A stretch of DNA of 64,000 bases from Mustelus asterias (lineage: Eukaryota), in contig NC_135820.1 in NCBI RefSeq assembly GCF_964213995.1, forward strand, positions 434,001-498,000, given 5' to 3'. Both the position numbers and the translations under genes were made by a program. Positions 27,964-48,134 of the stretch are shown here, one piece after another; position 1 is the stretch's first letter, and every line of letters begins with the position of its first letter. The notes under the pieces are model-generated. The model was not told the DNA's origin, did not search any database, and saw nothing but the letters and a program-made list of their open reading frames with translations.

Positions 27964-28003
27964 ATGATCGGGAAATCTTACTTCCTCCTGTCACTTCTCC
28001 AAG
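27964..28003 (+). CDS. Siglec-like gene B leader (signal peptide) exon, coding part
   Basis: acaATG ATC.. = MIGKSYFLLSLLQ + G|gtaata (phase 1); acceptor ttctctttcag at 27921. Joins in frame to any V exon. Confidence 0.8.
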
Positions 28004-28969
28004 GTAATATCATCGACAGCTTGGACAGATTTATGGTTAATAATCTTTGTAAAAGATCATTCTTGTTGAGCTCTGATTGGGAACCAATTCAGCAGTGACC
28101 CAGTGTACAAACTCTCACCAAGTCCCATTCACCCATCAGCTCTGTGCTCACTGATATACGCTGACTCCCTGTCTGACAGCAGAGTTAGAGGACAGCAGAG
28201 ATGTTAGAGGGTTGTACTGACTGGAGGATGTTAGAGATGGGGAGGTTTGTATAGACTGGAGGATGTTACAGTGATGGGGAGGGTTGTGGCGGCTGGAGGA
28301 GGCAATAGAGATACGGAGGGTTGTTGGGGCTGGGGGAGATTACAGAGATAGAGTTGTAGGGGCTGGAGGAGAATCTTACCTTGACTTGCTGTTGGATATA
28401 GGTTAGCGAGTGGAAGTGCTGAGTAGAGAATCAGGGATTAAAAACTGGGTGGAGAAGTCTATCCCGTTGCTTTGAAAGCTTGGCCTGAACTTTGTGTATT
28501 TTGCTGATTTTCATCAGAATGTTCCACGAAGACGACACAGAAGCTTCTAGAATAGACAGGTTGCTCAGCGTCACACTTCCTGTCCATTCACACCACGCTA
28601 GAAACTTCCATTAGGGTGCAAGACAACTGAAATAGAAACAGAAGAAAAACATGCGGTGTATAAATGTGTGAAATAATTTAACTTCTCATGATTGTCTCTG
28701 ACCTGCTGCAAAGTTTAAATTTGCAGCTCAGAAGGAGGCGATTGATTTACTGCCTGAAAGGGTGCGAGAAGCAGATTCAATGGGAACTTTCAAAAGGCCA
28801 ATTAGATCAAAACCTGATGGGGAAAAACTTGCAGCAATATGGGTGAAAGAGAGGGGGAGGGAGAATGATGACTAATCGTATAGATCTTTCAAAGAGCCAG
28901 CACAAGAATGATGGGCAGAATGGCATCCTTCTGTGTTGAATCATTTGACAATCCAATGATTTAAGATAC

Positions 28970-31547
28970 TTACCAACAACTCTTCAGGTTCCTGCTGAAG
29001 TCATGGATCTTTCAGAAGGACAGGGAACAAGAGGGTTCTGGTCATCATGTTCGTGTTTCGCTGCCATTACAGAAGTGTACAGAGCCAATGAATCTCTGAG
29101 TCTGTAAAGCACTGAGGCAATCTGCTGGTACTCCCACATCTTGTCATGGCGACTGTGTCTGGAGTTTCTTTAATTGCTCACACTGATCTGTGGGATCGTC
29201 ATTCTTCCATGTTGTTCCTGGTTTCAGTGCCCTGGATGAACTCGGATTGTACAGTGGGAGAGGAGCTGGAGTAGATCTGATTTGTCCTCAGTTTTGCCTC
29301 TTTGCCTTTGTCTGGGATGATTTCAAAGGATCCCGACTCAGAACAAATCCTCGTCACCTCGACTGGTTGCTGCGAACCTTCTGCGGGATCCTGAATGTCA
29401 AATTGTTGTCCCAACTGTAAATTTGGAATTCTGTATTCTCATTTTAATCATAAATCAGAGTCGACATGTGTTTGTGAAAAGGAATATCATGTTTGAAAGG
29501 TTGAATAGAATTCTTTGAGGATGTAACAAGCAGGGTGGAGAAAGGAGAATGAGTAGATGTGGTGTATTCGGATTTCCAAAATGCATTCAATAAAGTGCCA
29601 CATAAAAGGTTACTGTGCCAGATAAAATTTGATAGTGTTGGGGGTGATATATTAAAATGGATAGAAGATTGTGTAACTAACAGGACACAGAAAGTCAGGG
29701 AGCGAGGCAGGAAAGAAAGCTGTGAGGAAGACACAAAGAAGCTGCAGAGAGATAAAAATCATTTCAGTCAGTCAGCAAAATATTTGTGGGATGGAATATA
29801 AGGAGGCAAAATGTGAGGCTGTCCACTTTGGCGGGAAGTGTTGAAAATAAGAATATTAGACACGTATGGAGTGATTGCAGAATGCTGCAGCACAGAGGGA
29901 ACCTGTACATGAATCTCAAAATGTTCCCATGTTGGAACAGCAAAGAATTAAGAAGGTAAATGAAATATCGGTCTTTATTGAAAGGGGGATAGAGTGTAAA
30001 AGTAGGGAAGTCTTGCTACAACTGTACAGGCCATTGGAGAGGCCACATCTGGAGTAGTTTTTGTCTCCTTACTGAGGAGGGATGTTCTGGTATTGGAGGC
30101 AGTTCAGAGAATGTTCACTAGACTGATACCTGGGTTGAAGGGGTTTGTCTAATGAAGACATTTTGAACAGTTTGTGTCGATACTCACTGGAGTTTAGAAG
30201 AATGAGAGGTGATCGAATTGAAACATAATTGTGAGGGGTTTTGACAGAGTGGATGCTGAGGCTGATATAACTCCTCAGAGGCTGGTGTCAGAATGAGGGG
30301 TGTCCCACTGAAGAGGGAGAAGAGGAGGAATTTCCCCTCTCAGAGACTCATCAGTCTGTGGAATTCTCTCCCCCAGAGGGCAGTGCAGGTCACTTGTTAA
30401 AAGTTCATCAGCTGACTCCTGTGACTCTGCTCAGTCGCCTCCTTCCCCGTATCTGACAAAAGATAAAAGTTAGGATTTATCAGACCAGCTTCCACTCTGC
30501 TATCTGAGTTATCCAGTGGTAACATCAGTTGGAACGATAACATCACCGAGTACAACTGTTGCACACACCCTGAATATTTTAATTTCAGAGATCTTTATGG
30601 ATTACGGTCTGCAATTCATTGTTGGGCCATTTCAGGATATGTGTATAAAGTGAAATATCGATCAACGCTCTTCCTCTCATTGTGCACATCACTGTCATCT
30701 TTTGGTTTGTCAATCACTTCATGTCTGTGTTTCTGTTTTCAAAGATTTCCTGTACAGTCAGCAGCTGTGATTTCAACATTCTCCGACACTGCGACTGTTG
30801 TGTTTGATCAAAGTGTCCAGGGTGGTCTCATGTTATGCCGCGTGACTGAAGGCTGTTCACCGTGTCGTACCTGTACTGAATCTTGCTCCCAGAATGTTTG
30901 ACCACCGCTGAACATCATGTTGTGTTTTAATAATGATATGAAAGCACCAATCACTCATTAGGGATTGTACAAATATGTTGTTTTTTATTATTCATTTGTG
31001 GGACATGGGTGTCGCTGGCGGGCCAGCATTTACTGATCATCCCTGTTACCCTTGAAGGGCAGTTGAGAATCAACCACATTGCTGTGGCTCTGGAGGCACA
31101 TGTAGGCCAGACCAGGTAAGGACGGTAGATTTCCTTCCCCAAAGGACATCAGTGAACCAGATGGGTTTTTTTGACAATCGACAATGGTTTCACGGCCAAC
31201 ACTAGATTCGTAATTCCAGATTTGCTTTGTAGAATTCAAATTCCACCATCTGCTGTGACGAGATTCAAATCCAGTCCCCAGAACATGAGCTGAATTTCTG
31301 GATTAATAGTCTGATGATAATACCACTAGGCCATTGCCTCCCCGAAACCCTAACCCTTTGTGGGTTCAATTATTTAGACGAGGCACATGAGAGCAGATGT
31401 ACATGGATAGAAAGTTTGAAGACACCAGCAGCAGATCTGTGTGTGCTGTGTTCTGCTGACAGGCCACAGTGAAACTAAGACTGGATCACATGAAACACTT
31501 CCCCAGTAGTGATGTCATGCTGCTAATCCCTTAAAGGCAAATTACAA
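28970..31547 (-). mobile_element. Decayed Gypsy-type deletion derivative with LTR-like segment (~31350-31547), containing nested CR1 (+, ~29450-30400) and SINE
   Basis: 29150-29440 resembles 3420-3710, 30670-30740 resembles 59710-59770, and 31440-31547 resembles 850-970 and 51940-52005. Confidence 0.5.
30985..31345 (-). mobile_element. tRNA-derived SINE (DeuSINE/SacSINE-like)
   Basis: Minus-strand head gggaggcaatggcctagtggta with a B-box-like ggatttgaatc; tail ..cccacaaatgaataataa. Confidence 0.6.
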
Positions 31548-31941
31548 TCAATTGGAACCGCTGTCTGAGACACTGAGGATCCAGGAAGGTGAGGCTAATG
31601 AGTGATTCATGATGGTGAAAATGGTGGGAGCTATGGGGACACCTAATCCATTGTCCTGCCTTGTCGATCAGCACTCAATGTATCTCTATTGGTGCGTCTT
31701 GTAGACATTGTGTTGGGTGGAGACTGGCTTCATTAAACAGGATCTGAGGACCGTGAGCCAATGTAGAATGAACTTGTCCACTCCAGGATTCTCTTCCATC
31801 CATTGTGAAACCTTGGGGAGTTCTTTGTGTGTCCTGTAGATGGTCCACACTGCAGCCACTGTGCACCATTGACAGAGGGGGTGGATATCGAGTCTGGTGG
31901 ATCTTTGATCCAGTGTTAAATATTGATATTTCTCTCCCCAG

Positions 31942-32307
31942 TTGGATTGTCGCTGGAGTGGAAAGGCGACACTCCAAGTGAGATGACAGCGCAGGAAGGT
32001 TCGTGTGTGCAGATTCCCTGTCGTTACAGTTATCCATCACATTTGACAAACCAGCCGCGAATCGGAATCTGGTATAAAAATGAGGAAAGGGGAACAAAGC
32101 CTACAGCCTTTCACTCCGAGGAGCACAATAGGATATCGTCACAATTCCGCAATCGGACCCGGCTGTCTGGAGACCTGAAAGATGGCAACTGTTCCCTGAT
32201 TATACACAACGTCAGACAGGGAGATGCTGGATCTTATTATTTCAGAATAGAATTTGATGTCAAGAATAGTTACAACTTCGACCCTGTAACCCGGCTTCAC
32301 GTTTCTA
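31942..32307 (+). CDS. Siglec-like gene B V-set exon V1
   Basis: tctctccccag| .. A|gtaagt, phase 1-1. (V)GLSLEW..GSCVQIPC..GNCSL..DAGSYYFRIE: Siglec B-E strand Cys pair, inter-domain Cys and essential Arg. Confidence 0.92.
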
Positions 32308-32461
32308 GTAAGTGCTGCATTATAATTACTCAACAATTCACAGCCCACACTTAATGGGAAACAACACATCCCAGTGTTTGATTTGCTTTTTGTGCCTGTG
32401 TTAACCAGTGTCAGTATATTTAATGATTTATCTATTTCTGCTCCAGATCCATGAACTTGTT

Positions 32462-33803
32462 GGGGGCGATTCTCCCCCCAAAATTCTAAGTATTGAATTT
32501 GTGTGAAAGCTGGAGTAAATCCCGCTGGTTTTTACAGCGGGAGTTTAAACATGAATCTCCCAGACTCTGTGCACTGCAGAGTGCACTGGAGTGAATCACA
32601 TTAACATTCAGTGGGCAGGGGCTATTCCCGGTGGAGAGGCTGGCAGCATAGTGCTGAGCGGGCCACTGTGCATGCACCGATTTGTCAGCGCCGAGATAAG
32701 CGTATGCACAGTGGCCTCGCACTGCTGGCCTCCTGATCGCTGGCCTCCTGATCGCTGGCCTCCCGATCGCTGGCCACCCGATCGCTGGCCTCCCGATCAC
32801 TGGCCTCCCGATCACTGGCCTCCCGATCGCTGGCCTCCCGATCGCTGGCCTCCCGATCGCTGGCCTCCCGATTGCTGGCCACCCGATCGCTGGCCTCCCG
32901 ATCGCTGGCCTCCCGATCGCTGGCCTCCCGATCGCTGGCCTCCCGATCGCTGGCCTCCCGATCGCTGGCCTCCCGATTGCTGGCCAGCCCCGCAATCCTG
33001 CAACGCCCACCGTGCAACCACCCTGGCCCAATCGCTTGTCTACCGGACGTATACGGGCAGCCTTGACCCCTCCACCCCCCGCACAGTGCCAGTCCTCCCA
33101 ACCTGCAGTCAGGACCCCCCCAGAAGGCTGCCCTCCCCCAACCCGGAATGCCAGCCACGATAACTGGCATCCTTCCCTTCCCACCGATCCTAACTGCAGA
33201 GTGGCAGCGGGAACCCCCACCCCCATCGATCGTTCTCCCTGAGGACCCCCCATCAGACCCTGCCCCATTATGCTCCGCCTGCTTGGCACTGCCCCCTGTC
33301 TGAGGGTCAGTGCCATAGTGCCAAGGGCATTGGCAGTTTGCCCCTTGGGCAGTGGCAGGAGGCCAGACTGGCACTGCCAAGGCTCCAATGCCCAGGGCCC
33401 CCCTCCCGGCGCTGGACTCTCTGGCAGGGCCTCGATTGCCCCCCTTCACTCCAGCGGGCCTGGGTCACCAGCTCCCCACAATTGGGGAGATGCTGGAGTG
33501 AAACACTCCTGGTGGGGGGCCGGGGAGGGGGTGGGGGGTGGTAGGGGGGTGAATGCGAGCGGGCCCAGAGAATTCAGTCCCGGGCCCGCTAATGGTATTT
33601 AAATTACATGCAAATTAGGTGCTGCATAATTTATTCAGCTCCCCGCTGATTTCCGACACAGAGCTGACAACATTGGAAATCCGGCGCTGGGAGATTCGCT
33701 CAGGTCCGGATGCCCAGCGGTGAGCCCGAAAATCGGGCGCTGCTAGAATCTTCCGGCCCACTGCGCTAAAAGATCAGTGCAGCGGGGCGGGAGAATTGCC
33801 CCC
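32462..33803. mobile_element. MITE (same family as 6853) containing a 15-bp tandem expansion at ~32725-32985
   Basis: TIRs GGGGGCGATTCTCCC / GGGAGAATTGCCCCC; (CTCCCGATCGCTGGC)n, ~17 copies. Confidence 0.8.
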
Positions 33804-33809
33804 ATTGTG

Positions 33810-34620
33810 TTTGAACACAGCTTGTCCATGAGGGCCACCTCCTGTTCCCTCAATCCGATTCCCAGCAAACTGCTGACCGGACAACTTCCCCTCCTGGTCT
33901 CCGTGTTCGCCGATATTGTTAACAGTTCACTCTCTCTCCGCGTGCCGTCCCTCTCTCTTTCGAATCAACCTTCAATGACCTTCTCCACACAATAACAATC
34001 ATTGACCCCTCTGTCCTTATAAACTCCAGTCCTGTCTCCAACCTCTCTCCCATCTCCAAAGTTCTTGAACGTGTTTTCATCTCCTGAATCCGTTCCCATC
34101 TTTCCCGGAACTCCATGGTTGAATTCCTCCAATCAGGTTGCTGCCCCGGCCACAGTACTGAAACATTTCTTATCAAAGTCACTGATGACACCCTGTGTGT
34201 CTGTGACAAAGGGAAACTTTCTCTCCTCGTCCTTCTCCACCTGTCTGCACCCTTTGACACGGTGACCGCACCATCCTCCTCCAATGAAAACCATTGTTTA
34301 CAGTCCCTATTCCAAACTCCGTTCCCGAGCGACCGACTCCATCCCTCTCCCTGGAATCTCTCTGAGATTAATCCAATCCGGTCGCAAGTTTGGTTTCCCA
34401 TTTGATCCTGAGATGAGTTTCCGACCTGATATCCGTGCTATCACTGCGACCGTTTACTCCCACCTCTGGAACACCGCCCGACTTCACCCCGTCTCGGGGC
34501 ATCTGATGCAGAAACCCTCATACATGCTTTCAGGACCTCCACTATCGACTATTCCAACGCACATTCTTCCCTCCACAAACCTGAGGTCATCCAAATCACT
34601 GCTGCCCATGTTTCAACCTG
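33810..34620 (+). mobile_element. Decayed L2-clade LINE fragment
   Basis: SCSLNPIPSKLL; QSGC..HSTETFLIKV..LLHLSAPFDTV. Confidence 0.65.
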
Positions 34621-34849
34621 CACAACATTCTCTGAATTTAAGGTGATTGGACCACTCCTTGCTCTGGAGAGGGGATGTTCCTCGGTAACGTACAGCATTG
34701 TTTGTGTTTTTTCACAGTGCATGGTGGGTTTGTAGAATGTCCCAAAGGTGGAGGTTGGCTATCCAGGGGCCCTGGCCTGTCCTGAACCTGTCCTAACCTA
34801 TTTAGCAACGCGGACTCTTGCCTTGGGAGTTCAAAGCCTTGGGCCTACA

Positions 34850-35760
34850 CCAACATTCAATAAGATCATGGCTGATCCGGTTGTGGTCTCAACTCCCACT
34901 TTTCTGTCTGCCCTCCCATAACCCTCGACTCCCTTGTTGATCAAAACTCAGTCTAACTCAGCCTTGAATATATTCAATGACCCACAGCCTCCACTGCTCT
35001 CTGGGGGAGAGAATTACGCAGACTAATGACCATCGGAGAGAAGAAATTCCTCCTCAAATTCGTCTTCAATGGGAGACCCCTTACTTTGAAACTGTGCTCC
35101 CTGAGGGGCAAACATCCTCTCAGCATTCACCCTCTCGAGCCCCCTCAGGATCTTACATGTTTCAATAAGATCATCTCTCATTCTTCTCGACTCTAATGAG
35201 TACATGCTCAAACTGCTCAACCTGTCCTCTTAAGATAACCCACTCAGCCCAAAAATCAGCCGAGTGAACCTTCTCCGAACTGTTTCCAATGGAAGTATGT
35301 TCCTCTCTAAGTAAGGAGACCAGAGCTGTGCACAGTACTCCAGGCATGGTTTCACCAATGTCCTGTACAATTGTAACAAGATGTCCCCACTTTTATATTC
35401 CATCCCCTGGTAATAAAGGCTTACATTCCATTTGTCTTCCTAAGAATGCTAAATTTCCCCTTCGTGTCCAAAGATGTGTGGGTTAGGTGGATTCACCGTG
35501 GTAAATGTGCAGATTTACAGGAATAAGGCGGGGTGATGGCCCTGAATAAAATGCTCTTTCTGAGGCTTGGTGCAGACTCGATGGGCCGAATAGCCTCTTT
35601 CTGCACTGTATGTTCCACGGCTCTGTCAATTGCTGTACGAGAATGCTAACAGTTTGTGATTCATGTACAAGGACACTCAGATCCCTCTGTACTGCATTCC
35701 GCAATCCCTCTCATTTTCAATAATATTCTGTTTTTCTCTCCATCCTGCCAAAGTGATTGA
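34850..35760 (-). mobile_element. Decayed CR1 3' fragment with an HE1 tail piece (~35448-35615)
   Basis: YSLESRRMRDDLIETCKIL; AVQRDLSVLVHES. Confidence 0.75.
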
Positions 35761-35872
35761 TTGCGGAGCTCCTCAGTATTGACTCTCTCCCAAATTCACT
35801 CAATTCTGTACGTTTTGTGTCCAGTGGATCTATAAACTATCCAGGGTTAAATGTTGATATTTCTCTGCCCAG

Positions 35873-36241
35873 CTGAACCGTCACAGGAGTGGAACAGTGA
35901 CACTCCACAAGAGGTGACAGTGCAGGAAGGTTCGTGTGTGCAGATTCCATGTCATTACAGTTATCCATTGTGTCTGAGACACCGACCACGAGATGGAGTC
36001 TGGTTTAATAACAAGGAACAGATTCCCAATGCTCCCGTAGTCTTTCACTCCAAGGATCACAAGAGTATATCATCACGGTTCCGCCATCGGACCCGGCTGG
36101 CTGGAAACCTGAAAGATGGCGACTGTTCCCTGATTATTACCAACATCAGACAGGAAGATGCGGGACCTTATTATTTTAGAATCGAATTTGACAATGGTCC
36201 CAGCTATAGTTATCGCCCCGTAACCCGGCTTCACGTTTCTG
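35873..36241 (+). CDS. Siglec-like gene B V-set exon V2
   Basis: ttctctgcccag| .. G|gtaagt, phase 1-1; (A)EPSQEW..CVQIPC..GDCSL..DAGPYYFRIE. Confidence 0.92.
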
Positions 36242-36702
36242 GTAAGTGCTGTGTTATAATTATTCAATAATTCACATTCAAACTGTGACATTTACATATT
36301 AACACAAAACACAGCTTATTATAGAACAGTGTCTGATTATCAATAACCTGGTGATAGCTTCCAGTTCAGTCTTAAAGCAACCTCGAATACTCACTTTAAT
36401 GTCAATGATTAAATGCACTGACTGCGTCCATCAATGTTATCAGGTTATCCAATCCCATCAATCTCTCTGATCCTGTTTAAAAGTCGTACATATCGACCTC
36501 CACACCGTAATCAAATATTGTCTTTATGGGTGACAGAGGTAATAGGGGAGGGAGGTGCTGTTGATGTAACACTCGTGAGTTTTCTATGTTCTGTAGATGG
36601 TCCACACTGCAGCCACTGTGTGCCAGTAACAGAGGGGGTGGATATCGAGTGTAGGGGATCTACAAACCATCCAGTGTTAAATATTGATATTTCTCTCCCC
36701 AG

Positions 36703-37068
36703 CTGAACTGTCAAAGGAGTGGAAAGGCAACACTTCACGAGAGGTGACAGTGCAGGAAGGTTCATGTGTACAGATTCCATGTCAGTACAGTTATCCATCG
36801 TGTTTGGCAAACCAGCCGCGAGTCGGAATCTGGTTTAATAATGAGGAATATTCATCATCATCGATCGCCTTTCACTCCGAGGATCACAATCAGGAGGCAG
36901 CACAATTCCGCAATCGGACCCGGCTGTCTGGAGACCTGAAAGATGGCGACTGTTCCCTGATTATAAACAGCGTCACACGGGGAGATGCTGGACCTTATTA
37001 TTTCAGAATAGAATTTGACGGAAGGAATCGTTACAGCTACCACCCTGTAACCCGGCTTCGCGTTTCTG
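36703..37068 (+). CDS. Siglec-like gene B V-set exon V3
   Basis: ttctctccccag| .. G|gtaagt, phase 1-1; (A)ELSKEW..CVQIPC..GDCSL..DAGPYYFRIE. Confidence 0.92.
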
Positions 37069-37554
37069 GTAAGTTCTGTGCTATAATTACTCAATAATTC
37101 ACATTCATCACTCAATGGGAAATAACACAAACTGTGATGTTTACAAATTAACACAAAACACAGCTTATTATAACACAGTGTCTGGTTATCAATAACCTGG
37201 TGATAGCTTCCAGTTCAGTCCTGAAGCAACCTCCAATACTCACTTTAATATCAATGATTAAATGTACTGACTGCGTCCATCAATGTTACCGGGTTATCCA
37301 ATCCCATCGATCTCTCCAATCCTGTTTAAGATTCTGACATATCGGCGCAAGACTCACATTTCTATAGCGCCTGTCACCACCTCAGGACATCACAAATTGA
37401 TTCACAGACAATGAAATAATTCCTGAATTTCACATTCTGAACACTGTGGTAAATGAGTCCCTGCTGAATTCCAGATTGGATTTATTAGTGTCTAATTTGT
37501 GCACAGCAAGCTCCCACAGACAGCAATCTGATCAATAACCTGATTAATAACCTG

Positions 37555-38440
37555 AGCAAGAGGGATACAAACAGTTTACAAAGAGATGTTGATAGGTTAA
37601 CTACCTGGGCAGAAAGTTGGCAAATGGAATATAATGTGGGAAAATGTGAAGTTGTTCATTTTGGAAGGGAGAACAAAAGAACAGAGTATTATTTAAATAG
37701 AGGAAAAACTGCAGAAAGCTGCAAATCAAAGGGACTTGGGGTACTTGTGAACGAAACACAGAAAGCTAGCACACAGGTACAGCAGGTAATCAAGAAGGGG
37801 AATGGGATGTTGGCCTTTATTTCAAGGGGGTTGGAGTATAAGAGTAAGGAAGTCTCGCTGCGACTGTGCAAGGTACTGGTGAGACCACATCTGGAGAACC
37901 GGGAGCAGTTCTGGTCCCCTTATTTCAGGAAAGATATATTTCATTGGAGGCGGTTTGGAGAAGGTTCACGGGGATGATCCCTGGTTATGGAGGGATTGTC
38001 TTCTGAGGACAGGTTAAACAGGTTGGGACTCTATTCATTGGAATTTAGAAGAATGAGAGGTGATCTCATTGAAACATTTAGGATTCTTAAGGTATTTTAC
38101 AGAGTAAATGTTGAGAGGATATTTCCCCTCATGGCAGAGTGTAGGATCAGAGGGTGGAGTCTCAGAATATTGGGGCACCAATTTAAGATTGAGATGAGGA
38201 TGAGTTTCTTCTCTCAGAGGGTAGTGAGTTGTTGGAACTCACTGCCACAGAGAGCTGGGGGGGCAGAGTCCTTGTGTATATTTCAGGCTGGGATAGATTT
38301 TTACCAGTAAAGGAATCAAGGGTTGTGGGGAAAGGACAGGAAAGTGGATGTGAGGAATGTCAGGTCAGCCCTGATCCTATTGAATGGTGCAGCAGGTTCC
38401 AGGGGCCAAGCGGCCGACTGCTGTTCTTATTTTTTATGAT
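37555..38440 (+). mobile_element. Decayed CR1 3' fragment
   Basis: ORFs 37624-37977 and 37987-38310 match the CR1 ORF2 C-terminus. Confidence 0.85.
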
Positions 38441-38943
38441 CAAATCTGATTCCAGTAAAAACAAATGACTGCAAATGCAGGATACTTGAAATAAAAACAG
38501 AAAATGCTGGGAAACCTCAGCAGGGCCGGCAGCGTCTGTGTCGAGAGAAAGTGAATTACCGTTTCCACTCCAATAGAATTCTTATTCTGTTTTAGCTGTT
38601 GGTTCAGAGATAGTTTCAAACTGTTTCTGTCCGATCGCAAACAGGATTTAATTTAAATTTGGCAGGTTTTGGACAAAGTGATGAACCTGTTCTCCCCGAG
38701 CTGTGAGCTGTCCCTCCACCCTCACCCAGTCTGGTCAAATCAAGGGTCACTGAGTGAAAGTGTATTAAGCTGCTGACAGAGTTTCAGCAAGTCTGAAAAT
38801 AGGAAATTCTTTCATAATCATTGTAATCTCTCAATTCAGATTTCATCCTTGTAACAATGCTTTCTCTTGTGGGGCTGTGATTTCTATTTGAACTGATGCT
38901 TCATGTTATATTTATCTAAAAGGATCCATTCTCTGTGTGTTAG

Positions 38944-39237
38944 ATTTCACAGATAAACCCACGATATTCCCTGCTGAAATTATTGCAGGAAAGTGTGTGA
39001 ACATAAGCTGCACCTTCAACACAACGTGCAATGGAACAGCACCTGTCTTAACCTGGGACACTCCCACTGACGTACCTGGGTCAGTCTCAAACACTGTAAC
39101 TCAGCATGGTGTCACTCTGACCTATACTTCTGTTCTGACCCTCATCCCATCACTCAAACACCACGGACACAATCTCACCTGTAGAGTGAGATATCCATCT
39201 GTTTCATCAGAGCGGATCCTCGGACTGACTGTACAAT
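38944..39237 (+). CDS. Siglec-like gene B C2-set exon 1 (domain 2)
   Basis: tgtgttag| .. T|gtaagt; DFTDKPTIFP..ISCTFNTTCNGTAPVLTW..HHGHNLTCRV, with the Siglec domain-2 extra Cys. Confidence 0.92.
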
Positions 39238-39439
39238 GTAAGTAAAGATATAATTCATTTGATATCAGGTGTAGTAGTTTCCATTCTGCACAGTAAGGCA
39301 GCACTGTGGTTTGGACTGGTGTGTCTGTCTTTAAATAGCAACATTGCCTCGTGAGAACACTCCATCAGATCATGTCTTGGGACAAGTTATATCCACGTCA
39401 GAGGGTAGAGGGGCAAGTTTTCGAATGTCAGATGAAAGA

Positions 39440-41235
39440 TGACACCTCTGTCAGTGCAGCACCACTTCAGTACTGACCCTCTGACAGTGCGGCACTCCCT
39501 CAGCACTGACCCTCTGACAGTGCGGCACTCCCTCAGTACTGACCCTCTGTCAGTGCAGCACTCCCTCAGTACTGACCCTCTCACAGTGCAGCACTCCCTC
39601 AGTACTGACCCTCTGACAGTGCAGCACTCCCTCAATACTGACCCTCTCACAGTGCGGCACTCCCTCAGTACCGACCCCCTGACAGTGCAGCACTCCCTCA
39701 ATACTGACCCTCTGACAGTGCAGCACTCCCTCAACACTGACCCTCTCACAGTGCGGCACTCCCTCAGTACTGACCCCCTGACAGTGCAGCACTCCCTCAG
39801 TACTGACCCTCTGACAGTGCAGCACTCCCTCAGCACTGAGCCTCTGACAGTGCGGCACCCCCTCAGTAATGACCCTCTGACAGTGCAGCACTCCCTCAGC
39901 ACTGACCCTCTCACAGTGCGGCACTCCCACAGTACTGACCCTCTGACAGTGCGGCACTCCCTCAGTACTGACCCTCTGACAGTGCGGCACTCCCTCAGTA
40001 CTGACCCTCTGGCATTGCAGCACTCCGTCAGTACTGACCCTCTGACAGTGCGGCACTCCCTCAGTACTGACCCTATGACAGTGCTGCACTCCCTCAGTAC
40101 TGACCCTCTCACAGTGCGGCACTCCCTCAGAACAGACCCTCTGACAGTGCGGCACTCCCTCAGTACTGACCCTCTGACAGTGCGGCACTCCCTCAGTACT
40201 GACCCTCTGACAGTGCGGCACTCCCTCAGTACTGACCCTCTGACAGTGCGGCACTCCCTCAGTACTGTCCCTCTGACAGTGCGGCACTCACTCAGTACTG
40301 ACCCTCTGACAGTGCAGCACTCCGTCAATACTGAGTCTCTGACAGTGCGGCACTCCCTCAGCACTGACCCTCTGACAGTGCAGCACCCCCTCAGTACTGA
40401 CCCTCTGACAGTGCAGCACTCCCTCAGTACTGACCCTCTGACAGTGCAGCACTCCGTCAATACTGAGTCTCTGACAGTGCGGCACTCCCTCAGCACTGAC
40501 CCTCTGACAGTGCAGCACCCCCTCAGTACTGACCCTCTGACAGTGCAGCACTCCCTCAGTACTGACCCTCTGACAGTGCGGCACTCCCTCAGTACTGACC
40601 CTCTGACAGTGCGGCACTCCCTCAGTACTGACCCTCTGACAGTGCGGCACCCCCTCAGTACTGACCCTCTGACAGTGCAGCACTCCCTCAGCACTGACCC
40701 TCTGACAATGCGGCACTCCCTCAGTACTGACCCTCTGACAGTGCGGCACTCCCTCAGTACTGACCCTCTGACAGTGCGGCACTCCCTCAGCACTGACCCT
40801 CTGACAGTGCGGCACTCCCTCAGTACTGACCCTCTGACAGTGCAGCACTCCCTCAGCACTGACCCTCTGACAGTGCGGCACTCCCTCAGTACTGACCCTC
40901 TGACAGTGCGGCACTCCCTCAGTACTGACCCTCTGACAGTGCGGCACTCCCTCAGTACTGACCCTCTGACAGTGCGGCACTCCCTCAGTACTGACCTTCT
41001 GGCAGTGCTGCACTCCCTCAGTACTGACCCTCTGACAGTGCAGCACTCCCTCAGTACTGACCCTCTGACAGTGCGGCACTCCCTCAGTACTGACCCTCTG
41101 ACAGTGCGGCACTCCCTCAGTACTGACCTTCTGGCAGTGCAGCACTCCCTCAGTACTGACCCTCTGACAGTGCAGCACTCCCTCAGTACTGACCTTCTGG
41201 CAGTGCAGCACTCCCTCAGTACTGACCCTCTGACC
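39440..41235. repeat. 33-bp tandem array (CTGACCCTCTGACAGTGCGGCACTCCCTCAGTA)n, left part
   Basis: Directly visible; 11-aa periodic ORFs. Preceded by a Deu-domain-like SINE segment at 39387-39450. Confidence 0.97.
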
Positions 41236-41243
41236 GGGATCAA

Positions 41244-42143
41244 TCAGAAACCTTTTGAGATGTCTAGCACCATAAACACAGACGCCGACGCCGGAATTTC
41301 TCCTAACAGGTCTGCTACGGCTGCCACTGTTGGTGCGCCAGCCGGAATGTTTTTGTTGAGGACCCTATAGTCTATCGTGGCCCTCCCGGAGTTGTCTGGT
41401 TTCCTCACTGGCCAGAGCGGAGAGTTTACGTGGGTCGCTATTGGCCTCAGGACGCCCTGCCTGACCAGTGAACTCAGGGCGACTTCTAAGTCAGCCTCCG
41501 CTTCCTGGGGAAAATTGTACTGCTTCTGCGGTCGGGACATGGGATCCCCTTCTATCCTGACCTCTGTCCCGGTGACCCTTCCACAGTCGTGCTTGTGAGT
41601 CGCGAAGGTGGCCAAATTTTGTTTCACGTATCCCTGATACTCAGTCGGGGTATTTCTCACTCGGGCATCTAGATCGTACCCCTCTCTGGGCTTCACGACA
41701 CACAGAGCCCCTTTCTCTGGTGCCCTCTCAATGACCATTACCCCCTTTTCAGCCCCTTCCTCTGCTATGACCCACAAACAGTGGTTTCTCAGGTCCACTA
41801 AGACCTGATGTGTCACTATGAAGTCAGCGCCTAATATCCCTTTTCCCTCCTGTTCCCATCTCATCAGGATGCATTTCCATTGCGCCTGGAGTACTCCTAA
41901 CCGAATGGACAGGGGAACAGATAAAAATCCCGCCTTCTCATTTCCCGTGAATCCGACAAGGCTATAGGGCGCCCCACTGGACAGAGGGGATGCAGGGGGA
42001 TTGTCCATGTGGACAATGGTACTGGAAGCACCTGTGTCCAGCAGGTAACTCCCGACCACATCCTGGACCTCCATTCTGACCCAGGGTCTCCCACATGGGC
42101 CATATTCAAGTGGGCACAGGAAGGTGGGTTGTTTTGCTGGCAG
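41244..42143 (-). pseudogene. pol: pro-pol N-terminal fragment (protease + RT fingers), truncated
   Basis: Open from the gag stop through GRPWV..LLDTG..ILGADF to LDISKGF*. Confidence 0.85.
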
Positions 42144-43928
42144 TCATAACGGCGCTGGAGACACGGGCACGGGTGCGCTCTGGCCTGTTGCCATGGCCAC
42201 CTGTCCGGACCCTCCCGTCTTAGACTGCAGATGTGCCATTAAGTCTTTTACATCCATCGTCCCCGGCCCGGTTGCTCCCACCTCCGGGGTTGGGGCGGCT
42301 GCTACCGGGGTCGCATCCTCCACTGCTTTACTTGGGTTCCTACACTCCCTCCTGTAGTGCCCGGGCTTCCCACACCCGTAGCACACTGGCCTCCTATCGG
42401 AAGTCCGGCTGCCTTCCTGCTTCCACTCCCTCCTCTTCCGGGGTGCTGGTGTAATGCCATGCACTTTGCTGTTAGAGGGTTTTTCCTCCCCTCTCTCCCC
42501 GTTGCGGTATGCGAGAGTGAGTTTTCTGATCACCTCCGCCTCATTAAGGTTCGGGTCCATTGGATCAAACTAATGTTTGGCCTTTGCCCTAACTCGCGGG
42601 AGGCAGTTTGCTACTAGAGTCTTCAGCCAGTGGGCGGTTCTCTCGTCCAGATTCCGCCGATCTAACGGAGTCCCACACGCTCCCTCAGACACTGCCCACA
42701 GCCTGTCTGTGAACATACTCGGGGACTCAGCCACCTGCTGCTTCGTTTCCCCCACCCTGGCGAAAGGACTACCCTGATCCAACCCCATGGCCTCCAGATC
42801 CGCTGCCTGTGCCGCTGCCCATGTTGCAGGTCTTCCCCCTTCCCTGGACGTCACTGCCTTACATAAATAGGAATCCAGGGTCATCAGCAGTAGTTTCACC
42901 CATTCCACCTCATCACAATCATTTATGTCGGCTGCCTGCTGCACCTCCATCAAATGTAATGATGGGTCTCCTGCCCGAGTCAACCTGGGAACGTGAGCCA
43001 CCATCCCCCTTAGCACGTGTGCCCCATGGGGAATGATGATGTCGCTCTCTATGGGGCCCCCTATCTGCCTGTCCCTCCGGGGGACCATATTTCCGCTGCC
43101 TTACCGGGCACATCTGCCCTACCTGGGGCTGCTGCCCCTTTAATTCTCCTACCCCTGGCTCTCCCACCATGATCGGTAACCCCACCCTCTGGTGTGCTAC
43201 ACATGGCCAAGACACCGCTGACTGGGGGTGCTCTTCCCACCCCCCTTGGGCCCGTCCCTCCGCGGATGCCCCGATCCCCACCTGCCAACCCGGACCCGTT
43301 GCCGGCGCCTCAGGAGGCGATCTATTTCCCCTTGCTTCTGGGGAATCATCAGCTGTTTGGAGCCCTCTGTCTGTGGGGGCCCCTCCGGGTCCTATCAAAT
43401 AGACCTGTCCCCAAGCCTTGGATGGACCCTCCTCCAGCTGGTCTATCCTTGCCCTGCAAAGCCCATGATCACTGGCCCCTACAGGCCACCCTGTAAGCTG
43501 CTTGGATATCCCGGAACTTCCCCTCCAGCTCCCTGTACCCCTGCGTACTCTGAGCCAGGAGTTTTTGGGCGTTCCGTTCCCTCTCCTTTGCCTCCACAGC
43601 CTGGCATTGGAGAAATGCCTGGGCATTCCTATGCGACTCCCTGGCCTGCAGGATACACTGCCTGGCCTCACCGAGTTCCTCATAGAGCCCTTCCTCTGCT
43701 CTAGCGCTTTCCTCTGCACCGGCCCTTGCTTCCGAGTTGCTCTTCCAAATCCCCAATCTGCTTTTCCATCTTGGCTACCTGCTGTGATAAGCACGCTAGC
43801 CAAACTGCCTTTTCCTGTGCTTTATTATAATTTTTACTCTCCGTCCACTCTGCTGCAGCCGCTGCTCCCACCCATTGTTTGGAGAGGTTGGTTTTTTTAA
43901 ACAGATAAGAGGAAATTCTTTCCTCCAT
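42144..43928 (-). pseudogene. gag: Disrupted retroviral gag (coiled-coil N-terminus, capsid-like region, one CCHC knuckle)
   Basis: ORF fragments 43701-43958, 43469-43756, 42570-43088 and 42144-42560 separated by frameshifts or stops. Confidence 0.75.
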
Positions 43929-44819: not shown

Positions 44820-45225
44820 TAAGAGAGCGGGCACACATCGAGAGCGAGAGAGAGAGAGAGCGGGCACACATCGAGAGCGAGAGAGAGAGAGAGCGGGCAC
44901 ACATTGAGAGCGAGAGAGAGACACAGCGGGCACACATCGAGAGCGAGAGAGAGACACAGCGGGCACACATCGAGAGCGAGAGAGAGCGGGCACACATTGA
45001 GAGCGAGAGAGAGACACAGCGGGCACACATCGAGAGCGAGAGAGAGAGAGAGCGGGCACACATTGAGAGCGAGAGAGAGAGAGAGAGCGGGCACACATCG
45101 AGAGCGAGAGAGAGAGAGAGCGGGCACACATTGAGAGCGAGAGAGAGACACAGCGGGCACACATCGAGAGCGAGAGAGAGACACAGCGGGCACACATCGA
45201 GAGCGAGAGAGAGAGAGAGAGCGCG
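44820..45225. repeat. ~30-bp GA-rich tandem repeat inside the proviral LTR-like region
   Basis: (GCGGGCACACATCGAGAGCGAGAGAGAGA..)n, ~13 copies. Confidence 0.9.
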
Positions 45226-45703
45226 AGCCGTTACTCGCTTGTCCTTTTTAAACCTCCCCGGTGATTCTCTCGCATAAAGCAATTTTTGATCACTGGTAGT
45301 TTCGACCGACTGGAACAAAGGGCCGGAACTGTCGGGGCCGCCCTTAATCGATATTATAATGTATTTTTTAATGTTTTCTGAGTCGGCCTGATTGTTTTCC
45401 CATCAGCGAGTTTGGTCTTAATGTTTTCTGTGGATGGGCTGATCTCTGTTCTCATTGTCTCGCTGCTGGGCTATTTACCCCTCGTCTGCTGGCCATGGTT
45501 TCTCCTTTGTTTCCTGTTGATTAGATCATCCCTGTCTCGACCTTCTCATTATTCCCAGCCTCTTGCATATTCATGTGGCTGTCAAGGTCCACCGACAGCT
45601 TTGCGCTTGGGAGTTTTGACAGCCAGCAGGCCATTTTAACAAATTGTCCATTCTCCTTATCCCTGGGTTCTTTAATCATGGAGGATTTGCCCTAAAACTT
45701 ACA

Positions 45704-47668: not shown

Positions 47669-47950
47669 ATGCACCGCAGAATCTTTCAATAACTTTGTTT
47701 GATATGTTTGATGCTTCCTGGATCAATATAACTGAGGGGAATTCGACAGTGATAATCTGCTCTGTCGAGAGCTTCCCAGCTTCTAACCTGACCTGGAGAC
47801 ATCTTAATGTCACAATGAACAGAACAAGATCCATCAATGAGCTGTGGTTGGTGATTCCTCACATTACGTCCAGGGACACTGGAGACTATCAGTGTGTGGC
47901 AGAGAATGAACATGGAGCAGTGGAGGGGTCCATCACCATCGCTGTGGAAC
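47669..47950 (+). CDS. Siglec-like gene B C2-set exon 2
   Basis: tttctttttag| .. C|gtgagt; YAPQNLSIT..IICSVESFPASNLTW..DTGDYQCVAENEHG..IAVE. Confidence 0.92.
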
Positions 47951-48134
47951 GTGAGTGTACACAGACTGCAACATCTCTCTCTCACACACAAACACTCAAA
48001 CACACACACACTCAATATTATTTGTATGAATGTTACATTGGAAAGGAAAAGTTGCATTCATATGGTGATGAGATCATCCTGAAACACTTTATAGCCAATG
48101 AAATACATTTGAATCATCATCATGTTCACTTTCA

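What the first reader, a model, noticed from the sequence alone, without database searches (positions are those of the whole stretch)
27964..39237. Siglec-like gene with a cassette of three interchangeable V-set exons between one leader and one constant region
Seen: a single leader exon (MIGKSYFLLSLLQ), three intact V exons with perfect splice sites (all phase 1-1), then one C2-C2-TM-ITIM region. I found no leader or C2 exon between the V exons, and V2-V3 are only 461 nt apart. Each V exon starts with what looks like the end of the signal peptide plus the N-terminal Trp (GLSLEW, EPSQEW, ELSKEW). Each also keeps the essential Arg (YYFRIE) and the Cys that in Siglecs bonds to domain 2. Established: Siglecs normally have one N-terminal V-set domain disulfide-linked to domain 2; Siglec-12 has two. 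Inference: only one V can pair with the single domain 2, so the design favours alternative or mutually exclusive V use (417-418 aa isoforms) over a 662-aa triple-V protein. That would be a Dscam-like, splice-diversified glycan receptor in a cartilaginous fish.
Basis: partly seen in the sequence, partly recalled or inferred. Interest (0 to 1): 0.85.

Follow-up and report, generated by a model that had tools for sequence, protein, structure and literature searches.

The report
Shark Siglec gene with three V-exons
A starry smooth-hound shark gene for a sialic-acid-sensing immune receptor carries three intact copies of its sugar-binding exon behind a single leader, and they are most likely spliced in a row into one long inhibitory receptor rather than chosen one at a time.

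Summary
One 40-nt leader exon is followed by three intact Siglec-type V-set exons of 366, 369 and 366 nt. All have AG/GT borders and phase 1-1. One C2 exon follows. The window has no second leader.

The window is Mustelus asterias. RefSeq already models this gene as a 662-aa V-V-V-C2-C2-TM-ITIM protein named "Siglec-12" (P0156). It maps residue for residue onto the window.

Tandem 2-4-V Siglec models occur in many sharks and rays. All three V exons show domain-typical constraint. V2 and V3 carry an extra B-C-loop cysteine that is typical of non-first V domains: 29 of 39 later, against 1 of 27 first and 3 of 104 single.

Strict one-V-at-a-time choice has no support. Variable V use has annotation-level precedent: catshark isoforms combine six V exons, and one white-shark isoform joins the leader directly to V2.

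No RNA data could be found, so splicing in this gene stays untested. The scan also noted a two-V gene of this kind elsewhere in this genome (s1-890464).

The parts
27964..28003 (+). Leader exon: start codon and most of the signal peptide (MIGKSYFLLSLLQ + 1 nt), phase 1 donor
   Evidence: It is the only leader-like sequence in the window.
31942..32307 (+). V1: first-type Siglec V-set exon (GLSLEW..., His at the extra-Cys position), 366 nt, phase 1-1
   Evidence: It is 97% identical in protein to V1 of the neighbouring paralogue P0165.
35873..36241 (+). V2: later-type Siglec V-set exon (EPSQEW..., extra Cys in PLCL), 369 nt, phase 1-1
36703..37068 (+). V3: later-type Siglec V-set exon (ELSKEW..., extra Cys in PSCL), 366 nt, phase 1-1
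31824..32368 (+). Duplication unit around V1 (exon plus about 118 nt upstream and 61 nt downstream), 84% identical to 36581-37129 around V3
35823..36495 (+). Duplication unit around V2 (exon plus 50 nt upstream and 254 nt downstream), 82% identical to 36653-37344 around V3. The V2-to-V3 period is 830 nt.
38944..39237 (+). C2a exon (C2-set_2). The CTFNTTC cysteines align with the B-strand Cys and the interdomain Cys of CD33 domain 2. An additional Cys (GKC) is Arg in several paralogues.
47669..47950 (+). C2b exon (I-set/Ig_3), phase 1-1
50208..50304 (+). Transmembrane exon (WTAGLLTAGIMLGIFLAGILVFMFV)
60567..60741 (+). Cytoplasmic exon with ITIM (LLYANI) and distal ITIM-like motif (TEYAQL), then the stop codon
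   Evidence: Motif comparison uses the passages of PMC7165337.

Best explanation
This is a Mustelus asterias member of an elasmobranch cluster of CD33-related-like inhibitory Siglecs. Its ligand-binding V-set exon was multiplied by local duplication of units of about 0.6-0.8 kb (exon plus flanking intron).

The main product is most likely the tandem protein: signal peptide, V1, V2, V3, C2, C2, TM, ITIM plus ITIM-like tail (662 aa). Each V keeps the sialic-acid-binding arginine and the flanking aromatic residues. The V copies differ mainly in the loops that vary across the family. The receptor would therefore present three lectin sites of probably different fine specificity on one stalk.

I infer that the chain is stapled by serial interdomain disulfides. 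The first Cys of CVQIPC in V(n) would bond to the extra B-C-loop Cys of V(n+1). The last V would bond to the C2 domain, as in ordinary Siglecs.

Because every Ig exon is phase 1-1, skipping a V keeps the reading frame. Shorter isoforms probably exist as minor or regulated forms.

Shown: the exon anatomy, the family membership, constraint on all three V exons, and the position-specific Cys pattern. Inferred: tandem inclusion in this gene, the disulfide chain, and ligand binding.
For: 1. RefSeq protein P0156 (662 aa, 'sialic acid-binding Ig-like lectin 12 [Mustelus asterias]') maps exactly onto leader, V1, V2, V3, C2a, C2b, TM and tail of the window. It is listed as a single model.

2. Tandem V is the rule in a whole subfamily.
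- The top 7 of 150 listed hits of a V3 search have 2-4 matched stretches.
- Among 131 proteins with a full high-scoring V, 27 have two to four.
- They come from Mustelus, Scyliorhinus canicula and S. torazame, Cetorhinus, Carcharodon, Chiloscyllium, Hemiscyllium, Rhincodon, Hypanus, Hemitrygon and Mobula.
- A neighbouring Mustelus paralogue, P0165, is also V-V-V.

3. First and later V domains are different kinds.
- On a tree of 78 V domains the label 'later' needs 10 changes, against a shuffled mean of 26.3 (0 of 500 shuffles as low).
- One clade (SH-aLRT 90) holds 22 later V domains from lamniform, orectolobiform and carcharhiniform sharks.

4. The extra Cys occurs in 29 of 39 later V, 1 of 27 first V and 3 of 104 single V. 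It lies 7 residues after the B-strand Cys. The C2 domain's Cys that aligns with the second Cys of CD33 domain 2 lies 6 residues after its B-strand Cys. CD33 C169 forms the interdomain bond (PMC7426717, passage). Siglec-6 C46-C172 does the same (PMC10122656, passage).

5. The residue 5 before the conserved Trp is Glu in 16 of 39 later V (including V2 and V3 here) and in 0 of 129 first or single V. Later V exons have therefore drifted away from the signal-peptide end that first V exons keep.

6. All three exons are constrained as real domains.
- In the family-conserved half of the columns dN/dS is 0.26-0.37.
- In the variable half it is 0.48-1.02.
- For V1-V3, 6.0 of 135.5 nonsynonymous sites changed in the conserved half, against 38.3 of 143.3 in the variable half.

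7. All three V exons have the same consensus gtaagt donor and a long pyrimidine tract.

8. An AlphaFold model of a basking-shark L-V-V-C2 relative (P0194) folds with mean pLDDT 81.8 and pTM 0.67. Its V2-C2 pair superposes on solved Siglec-10 (Z 19.5, rmsd 2.6 A over 211 residues) and on CD33.
Against: - No transcript evidence for this gene. The one run search found 4 holders, none on record as RNA and all holding intron sequence. Laying them gave DNA contigs only.
- P0156 and all relatives are automatic gene models. A gene predictor tends to chain every in-frame exon. I could not see their RNA support.
- The Cys-position association is not phylogenetically independent. Only 3 independent pairs lie on supported branches, and the sign test gives p = 1.
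- 10 of 39 later V lack the Cys. The second V of a mammalian Siglec-12 (P0279) has none.
- This gene's C2a has one more Cys (GKC), so cysteine parity does not come out even for the triple-V form.
- V1-V3 dN/dS over the whole exon is 0.89.
- RefSeq isoforms of other sharks show that V content does vary.
- The fold search gave no information on V1-V2 geometry: all two-domain Siglec matches chose V2-C2. I could not read model coordinates, so the proposed disulfide was not measured.
Confidence: 0.6

Rival explanations
1. Regulated cassette splicing. The V exons are independent cassette exons, and cells make substantial amounts of several isoforms with one, two or three V domains in different combinations. 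This would tune the valency and glycan specificity of one inhibitory receptor.
For: - All V exons are phase 1-1 and multiples of 3, so any subset is in frame.
- Catshark RefSeq isoforms X1, X2 and X3 share an identical leader and an identical C2-to-tail part. They use V sets D-E-F-C, D-B-C and A-B-C, which makes six different V exons.
- White shark isoforms of one gene are L-V1-V2 (598 aa), L-partial V1-V2 (562 aa) and L-V2 (475 aa, V1 skipped exactly).
- Each V here keeps the Trp, the Arg and the Cys needed to work next to the C2 domain.
Against: - For this gene RefSeq lists only the triple-V form.
- Only 2 gene groups among the multi-V models examined showed isoforms that differ in V content.
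- Those isoforms are automatic models whose read support I could not inspect.
- All three V exons have strong, near-identical splice sites.
- V2 and V3 begin with Glu-Pro/Leu-Ser, unlike any first or single V (0 of 129).
- No transcript-derived V-V or L-V(later) protein was found among 82 and 168 relatives. The two Logan-derived proteins found were single-V.
Confidence: 0.28
2. Strict mutually exclusive choice. Each mRNA takes exactly one of V1, V2 or V3, giving 417-418-aa receptors, as in Dscam exon clusters.
For: There is one leader and one C2 for three V exons, and no leader copy lies between them. The white shark X4 model shows that a leader-to-V2 junction can be modelled.
Against: - None of the known enforcing devices is visible. 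The introns are 3565 and 461 nt, so steric exclusion is unlikely. All borders are GT-AG. Co-inclusion keeps the frame, so nonsense-mediated decay cannot act as a filter.
- An RNAduplex scan of V flanks against the ends of intron 1 and of the V3-C2a intron gave z between -2.3 and +1.4, apart from two pairs at -3.2 and -3.9. No site was shared by all three V.
- Of the 6 isoform models that differ in V content, 5 co-include V domains.
- Later-type V domains carry the extra Cys, which would be unpaired in a single-V protein.
Confidence: 0.04
3. Only one V exon is really used. The others are decaying duplicates or exons borrowed from lost paralogues that the gene predictor chained in.
For: - The duplicates are no more conserved in the exon than in the adjoining intron: 79-84% over exon plus flanks.
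- Whole-exon dN/dS for V1-V3 is 0.89.
- There is no RNA evidence.
Against: - All three have open frames, intact AG/GT borders, all structural Cys/Trp/Arg residues and 66 of 122 invariant columns, despite 16-24% nucleotide divergence.
- Nonsynonymous change avoids the family-conserved columns in every pair (dN/dS 0.26-0.37, against 0.48-1.02), which neutral decay would not do.
- The same first-type then later-type order recurs in paralogues and in other species.
Confidence: 0.06

Closest known systems
RefSeq model XP protein 'sialic acid-binding Ig-like lectin 12 [Mustelus asterias]' (P0156, 662 aa)
   Same: It is this gene. Every segment maps exactly to the window's leader, V1, V2, V3, C2a, C2b, TM and cytoplasmic exons.
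   Different: It is an automatic model and name, not a described protein. It asserts tandem inclusion without evidence I could see. The name Siglec-12 reflects the multi-V look, not shown orthology.
Primate/mammalian Siglec-12 (Siglec-XII in humans)
   Same: It is a CD33-related Siglec with more than one V-set domain in tandem (PMC6288428, passages). A ground-squirrel Siglec-12 (P0279) aligns over 95% of a shark V-V query at 37% identity.
   Different: It has two V, not three. Its second V has no extra B-C-loop Cys. The shark arrays group with other shark V domains and ray arrays with ray V domains, so the multiplication looks independent of the mammalian one. That last point is an inference.
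CD33-related Siglecs (CD33, Siglec-5, -7, -9, -10)
   Same: - V-set with the essential Arg and the three-Cys pattern.
- C2 domain with the interdomain Cys.
- A short V-C2-C2-TM layout.
- A proximal ITIM and a distal T-E-Y-x-x-[IL] motif, like the Siglec-9 motifs quoted in PMC7165337.
- The V-C2 fold match of a relative: Z 19.5 to Siglec-10 and 19.4 to CD33.
   Different: The best sequence match of the V exons is MAG (E 7.5e-17), only slightly ahead of Siglec-10 and Siglec-5, so orthology is open. A teleost study states that fish lack CD33-related Siglecs (PMC7226832, abstract and passages). These elasmobranch genes are not covered there.
Catshark and white shark multi-V Siglec genes (P0160/P0151/P0001; P0183/P0288/P0290)
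   Same: They have the same leader (MIGKSYFL...), the same first-type plus later-type V order and the same C2a.
   Different: The catshark has at least six V exons, with 3-4 used per model. The white shark has two, with a V1-skipped isoform.
Dscam1-type mutually exclusive exon clusters
   Same: Both have an array of similar, in-frame Ig-domain exons between constant exons.
   Different: No docking/selector pairing was found. Co-inclusion is in frame and is what the gene models show. The array has three members, not dozens.

Membership tests
Siglec (I-type sialic-acid-binding lectin) | N-terminal V-set Ig domain of the Siglec type | tested here: met
   All three exons hit Pfam V-set and Ig_CD22 above the cut-off. 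The best solved relatives are MAG, Siglec-10, -5, -7, sialoadhesin, CD33 and Siglec-8.
Siglec (I-type sialic-acid-binding lectin) | Essential arginine on strand F, plus aromatic residues equivalent to sialoadhesin W2 and W106 | tested here: met
   R101 in YYFRIE, W6 and Y110 are invariant in V1-V3. Sialoadhesin chain residues 2-105 align with query residues 6-109 without net gap. The residue numbers W2, R97 and W106 are recalled, not taken from a call.
Siglec (I-type sialic-acid-binding lectin) | Three-Cys V domain (intrasheet pair plus one Cys bonded to domain 2) and a matching Cys in the C2 domain | tested here: met
   C21, C26 and C83 are present in all three V. The C2a CTFNTTC cysteines align with the two Cys of CD33 domain 2. 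The interdomain role is from PMC7426717 and PMC10122656 (passages).
Siglec (I-type sialic-acid-binding lectin) | Binding of sialylated glycans | not testable with these tools
   This needs recombinant V-Fc proteins on glycan arrays with Arg mutants.
CD33-related Siglec subgroup | Cytoplasmic membrane-proximal ITIM plus membrane-distal ITIM-like motif | tested here: met
   LLYANI and TEYAQL lie in the last exon. Compare Siglec-9 L-Q-Y-A-S-L and T-E-Y-S-E-I in PMC7165337 (passage).
CD33-related Siglec subgroup | Orthology or monophyly with the mammalian CD33-related cluster | tested here: inconclusive
   The V exons score MAG 7.5e-17, Siglec-10 1.1e-15 and Siglec-5 2.9e-15. I built no tree with mammalian Siglecs.
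Siglec-12-like (multi-V Siglec) | Two or more V-set domains in tandem in the mature protein | not testable with these tools
   This is predicted by RefSeq model P0156 and by the relatives. No RNA or protein data were available.
Mutually exclusive exon cluster (Dscam-like) | Alternative exons are never co-included | tested here: not met
   Only gene models were available. Of the 6 isoform models that differ in V content, 5 co-include V domains, and this gene's model includes all three.
Mutually exclusive exon cluster (Dscam-like) | An enforcing device: an intron too short for two spliceosomes, U2/U12 incompatibility, frame-shift plus NMD, or competing docking/selector RNA pairing | tested here: not met
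   The introns are 3565 and 461 nt. All borders are GT-AG. The exons are 366, 369 and 366 nt. The duplex scan found no shared docking site, but it was a crude test.

The most novel reading that the evidence does not exclude
Elasmobranchs run a splice-diversified lectin system. Arrays of two to six Siglec V exons sit behind one leader and are combined in different numbers and orders of choice, as in the catshark sets D-E-F-C, D-B-C and A-B-C and the white shark L-V2 form. The chosen V domains are then locked into a rigid, disulfide-stapled multi-lectin rod by a Cys that only non-first V domains carry. This Mustelus gene would be a three-exon member that can give up to seven in-frame V combinations on one inhibitory tail.
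Probability: 0.25. Interest if true: 0.7.

Novelty: new variant of a known kind. Interest (0 to 1): 0.45.

Why it matters
Siglecs are usually described as having one sialic-acid-binding V domain, with Siglec-12 the two-V exception. Fish are said to have only Siglec-1, CD22, MAG and Siglec-15 and no CD33-related inhibitory Siglecs (PMC7226832).

This locus and its relatives show that sharks and rays hold a cluster of ITIM-bearing, CD33-like Siglecs. In many of them the lectin exon has been multiplied two to four times per model, and at least six times in one catshark gene.

If the V domains are expressed in tandem, these are natural multivalent, possibly multispecific glycan receptors with a new inter-V disulfide. 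If they are combined variably, it is a modest splice-based diversification of an innate receptor in the oldest jawed vertebrates. Either outcome can be tested with one RT-PCR.

The gene model itself is already in RefSeq. The gain here is the interpretation, not the discovery of the gene.

Tried and rejected
- **RNA evidence.** The single run search on 31942-39245 returned 4 holders, none on record as RNA. Laying them on 31850-37150 gave only short DNA contigs. The 'joints' there lie in repeats. One of them (37019 back to 36216, 23 letters between) looks like a hybrid V exon of a paralogue. No statement on expression is therefore possible.
- **Transcript-derived proteins.** Among 168 relatives of P0004 (120 listed) and 82 relatives of the V-V part of P0003, only two clusters came from Logan run assemblies (P0245, P0278). 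Both are single-V.
- **Loci of the catshark and white shark genes.** The order of their V exons is therefore unknown and rests on proteins only.
- **Phylogenetically independent test of 'later position goes with extra Cys'.** Only 3 pairs lie on supported branches, so there is no power. The raw counts should be read as a family pattern, not as independent events.
- **Docking/selector search by RNAduplex with 30 mononucleotide shuffles.** There was no common site. The two low z-scores (-3.9, -3.2) involve the V3-C2a intron region that is repeated in inverted orientation elsewhere. I rejected this as evidence either way.
- **Fold search for V1-V2 geometry.** All Siglec two-domain matches took V2-C2. 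Coordinates cannot be read, so Cys-Cys distances were not measured.
- **Whole-exon dN/dS (0.53-0.89).** Alone it could not separate relaxed from diversifying evolution. The split by family-conserved columns did.
- **Literature.** Five searches found no paper describing multi-V Siglecs of cartilaginous fish: Siglec + shark + V-set; Siglec + cartilaginous fish; Siglec + elasmobranch; Siglec-12 + two V-set domains; Siglecs + teleost + CD33-related + V-set domain. Subscription journals are not covered. The whale shark genome paper lists Siglec families only in a supplementary file that I did not open (PMC8455134, one passage). Supplements are closed, and that file might bear on the novelty claim.
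- **Recalled, not checked.** Gnomon builds alternative isoforms only from transcript evidence.

Full report
**What is in the sequence**

- The leader exon runs 27964-28003. It is 40 nt: an ATG, thirteen codons (MIGKSYFLLSLLQ) and one further base, followed by gtaata.
- Three exons of 366, 369 and 366 nt follow at 31942-32307, 35873-36241 and 36703-37068.
- Each V exon is preceded by ...tatttctct(c/g)cccag and followed by gtaagt. Each is open and in phase 1-1.
- The V2-V3 intron is 461 nt.

A tblastn of the three V translations and of the next Ig exon against the whole 64-kb window finds exactly three V loci and one C2 locus. Every other hit has E of 0.26 or worse. The leader, searched as DNA with flanks and as peptide, occurs once.

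Short DNA contigs of four runs (at most three samples, one study) match V1, V2, the V2-V3 intron and V3. Many pieces have no difference, so the array is not an assembly artefact.

**What the exons encode**

- All three V exons pass Pfam V-set and Ig_CD22. The following exon passes C2-set_2.
- The nearest solved proteins are MAG, Siglec-10, Siglec-5, Siglec-7, sialoadhesin, CD33 and Siglec-8.
- The three V translations are 64-69% identical to V1, and 66 of 122 columns are invariant. The invariant residues include the CVQIPC pair, the E-strand Cys, the Trp near the N-terminus and the Arg of YYFRIE.
- The C2 exon's CTFNTTC aligns with the two Cys of CD33 domain 2. The second of these is the interdomain Cys according to passages in PMC7426717 and, for Siglec-6, PMC10122656.

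**Whose gene it is**

A search of V3 against the representative library gave 1393 hits at E up to 0.001. The seven best have two to four V-like stretches each. They are RefSeq models from sharks and rays.

A search with the closest of them, P0004, returned P0156, 'sialic acid-binding Ig-like lectin 12 [Mustelus asterias]', 662 aa. Exact-match mapping places all of P0156 on the window:

| Part | Coordinates |
|---|---|
| Leader | 27964-28003 |
| V1 | 31942-32307 |
| V2 | 35873-36241 |
| V3 | 36703-37068 |
| C2a | 38944-39237 |
| C2b | 47669-47950 |
| TM exon | 50208-50304 |
| Cytoplasmic exon | 60567-60741 |

Only the four split codons were left unmatched. The window is therefore M. asterias.

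That step was left out, and the joined sequence I used is the database record.

The tail carries LLYANI and TEYAQL. These resemble the proximal ITIM and distal ITIM-like motifs quoted for Siglec-9 in PMC7165337.

**How the array arose**

Self-comparison shows units of exon plus flanking intron:

- 31824-32368 (V1) matches 36581-37129 (V3) at 84%.
- 35823-36495 (V2) matches 36653-37344 (V3) at 82%.
- V1 matches V2 at 79%.

V3 shares its upstream intron with V1 and its downstream intron with V2. This is a mosaic that points to unequal crossing-over or gene conversion. The larger introns are filled with LINE reverse-transcriptase fragments and tandem repeats.

**Are all three exons alive?**

Whole-exon dN/dS is 0.53 (V1-V2), 0.89 (V1-V3) and 0.55 (V2-V3). 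On its own this is ambiguous.

I therefore split the 121 columns by their conservation in 153 V domains of other species.

- In the conserved half, dN/dS is 0.26-0.37 in every pair.
- In the variable half, dN/dS is 0.48-1.02.
- For V1-V3, 6.0 of 135.5 nonsynonymous sites changed in the conserved half, against 38.3 of 143.3 in the variable half.

Neutral decay would not respect the family's core. All three exons have therefore been translated as V domains since they diverged. The changes fall in columns such as 44-54, 59-67 and 105-111. These are loop regions, which in Siglecs shape glycan specificity (recalled knowledge).

**Tandem or alternative?**

Several lines favour tandem use.

1. Multi-V models are common. 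Of 131 proteins with at least one full, high-scoring V (score 100 or more; partial V domains and weaker Ig hits were left out of this count), 27 have two to four. They include a second triple-V gene next door in Mustelus (P0165), four-V models in Hypanus and Mobula, and three- and four-V models in both Scyliorhinus species.

2. First and later V domains are different kinds.
   - I built a tree of 78 V domains: all 66 from multi-V proteins plus 12 chosen single-V ones, out of 170.
   - On it the label 'later' needs 10 changes, against 26.3 on shuffled labels.
   - One clade (SH-aLRT 90) holds 22 later V domains from lamniform, orectolobiform and carcharhiniform sharks.
   - Ray arrays group apart.

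3. Later V domains have an extra Cys seven residues after the B-strand Cys: 29 of 39. Only 1 of 27 first V and 3 of 104 single V have it. Here V1 has His, and V2 and V3 have Cys. The C2 domain has its interdomain Cys six residues after its B-strand Cys. The simplest reading is that each later V offers the preceding V the partner that a C2 domain normally offers.

4. The residue five before the conserved Trp is Glu in 16 of 39 later V (V2: EPS; V3: ELS) and never in 129 first or single V. Later V exons are therefore not held to the signal-peptide end.

5. All three exons have equally strong splice sites, and co-inclusion is in frame.

The limits of this case are as follows.

- All relatives are automatic models.
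- The Cys association is a family pattern, not a set of independent events: 3 usable pairs, p = 1.
- Ten later V domains lack the Cys.
- A mammalian Siglec-12 second V lacks it.
- This gene's C2a has one more Cys (GKC; Arg in P0004, P0003 and P0168), which spoils simple parity.

**Evidence for variable V use**

Two RefSeq genes have isoforms that differ in V content.

- Catshark X1 (819 aa), X2 (698 aa) and X3 (696 aa) have the same first 21 residues and the same sequence from C2 to the end. Their V sets are D-E-F-C, D-B-C and A-B-C, which makes six distinct V exons.
- White shark X1/X2 (598 aa) is L-V1-V2. X3 (562 aa) starts V1 late. X4 (475 aa) joins the leader directly to V2.

Even so, five of these six forms co-include V domains.

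No RNA run holding this gene was found. No transcript-derived multi-V protein turned up either.

**Mutually exclusive splicing**

None of the known devices is visible.

- The introns of 3565 and 461 nt are too long for steric exclusion.
- All borders are GT-AG.
- Co-inclusion is in frame.
- A crude duplex scan of the V flanks against both ends of intron 1 and of the V3-C2a intron found no site shared by the three V. Z-scores lay between -2.3 and +1.4, except two at -3.2 and -3.9 that lie in repeated DNA.

**Structure**

The model was an AlphaFold prediction of a basking-shark L-V-V-C2 relative (P0194), made with 22 aligned sequences.

- It gave mean pLDDT 81.8 and pTM 0.67.
- Its V2-C2 pair superposes on Siglec-10 (Z 19.5, rmsd 2.6 A, 211 residues), on CD33 (Z 19.4) and on Siglec-5 (Z 17.7).
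- This supports family membership but says nothing on V1-V2 packing.

**Comparison with what is known**

Siglec-12 is the known multi-V Siglec, with two V-set domains (PMC6288428, passages). A study of teleost Siglecs states that fish regularly have only Siglec-1, CD22, MAG and Siglec-15 and lack CD33-related Siglecs (PMC7226832, abstract and passages).

Five full-text searches found no description of multi-V Siglecs in cartilaginous fish. The whale shark genome paper only mentions Siglec families in one sentence and refers to a supplement I could not see.

The scan itself noted a one-leader, two-V gene elsewhere in this genome (s1-890464). That fits the two-V Mustelus models P0004, P0168 and P0176.

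**Verdict**

- The gene is an already annotated member of an elasmobranch expansion of CD33-like inhibitory Siglecs with multiplied V exons.
- The most likely product is the tandem V-V-V receptor (0.6). Cassette-type variation is a serious rival (0.28). Strict one-of-three choice is unlikely (0.04).
- The new elements are three functional-looking lectin domains in series and the position-specific Cys that suggests a disulfide-stapled V chain. I rate this a new variant of a known kind, of moderate interest, and decidable by one RT-PCR.

Noticed in passing
window 39440-41234 and 45703-47542 (C2a-C2b intron): There are two large arrays of the same 33-nt minisatellite, with 54 and 56 copies at 90-92% matches. 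They flank retroelement-like ORFs on the minus strand (41244-43803), for which Pfam found nothing. A third 33-nt array lies at 44822-45219.
   Followed up: partly
window 32724-32985 (V1-V2 intron): This is a 15-nt tandem repeat (17.5 copies, 95% matches) in a GC-rich stretch. DNA contigs of the runs pile up here at very high summed depth, so it is a genome-wide repeat.
   Followed up: partly
window 47695-49647: The open frame of the C2b exon runs straight on past its donor into a LINE reverse-transcriptase fragment (RVT_1, E 1.5e-12 for 48694-49647). A mechanical ORF list therefore shows a 315-aa 'Ig-RT fusion' that is not a gene.
   Followed up: partly
window 55552-57546 (minus strand): A 664-aa open reading frame with a full reverse-transcriptase domain (RVT_1, E 3.7e-35) lies here. 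It is a fairly young LINE copy inside the 10.3-kb TM-to-tail intron.
   Followed up: no
window 38994-38996 (C2a exon, Cys of AGKCVNISC): This gene's C2a has an additional Cys where the paralogues P0004, P0003 and P0168 have Arg. P0176 shares the Cys. Whether it is free, pairs with a V Cys or makes dimers is unknown.
   Followed up: partly
window 36216-37019 (run X1): One DNA contig joins V3-like sequence back to V2-like sequence with 23 other letters between. It most likely comes from a hybrid V exon of a paralogue elsewhere in the cluster. V-exon bins also show two- to six-fold higher summed depth than unique introns.
   Followed up: no
TM-to-tail intron of the gene: The RefSeq model jumps 10.3 kb, across assembly gaps, from the TM exon to the tail exon. 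Any alternative TM or tail exon hidden in the gaps would be missed.
   Followed up: no
P0005 / P0196 (Cetorhinus maximus RefSeq isoforms): The basking shark 'Siglec-12 isoform X3' is L-V-V-TM-tail with no C2 domain at all. C2 exons therefore also appear to be skipped in some models.
   Followed up: no
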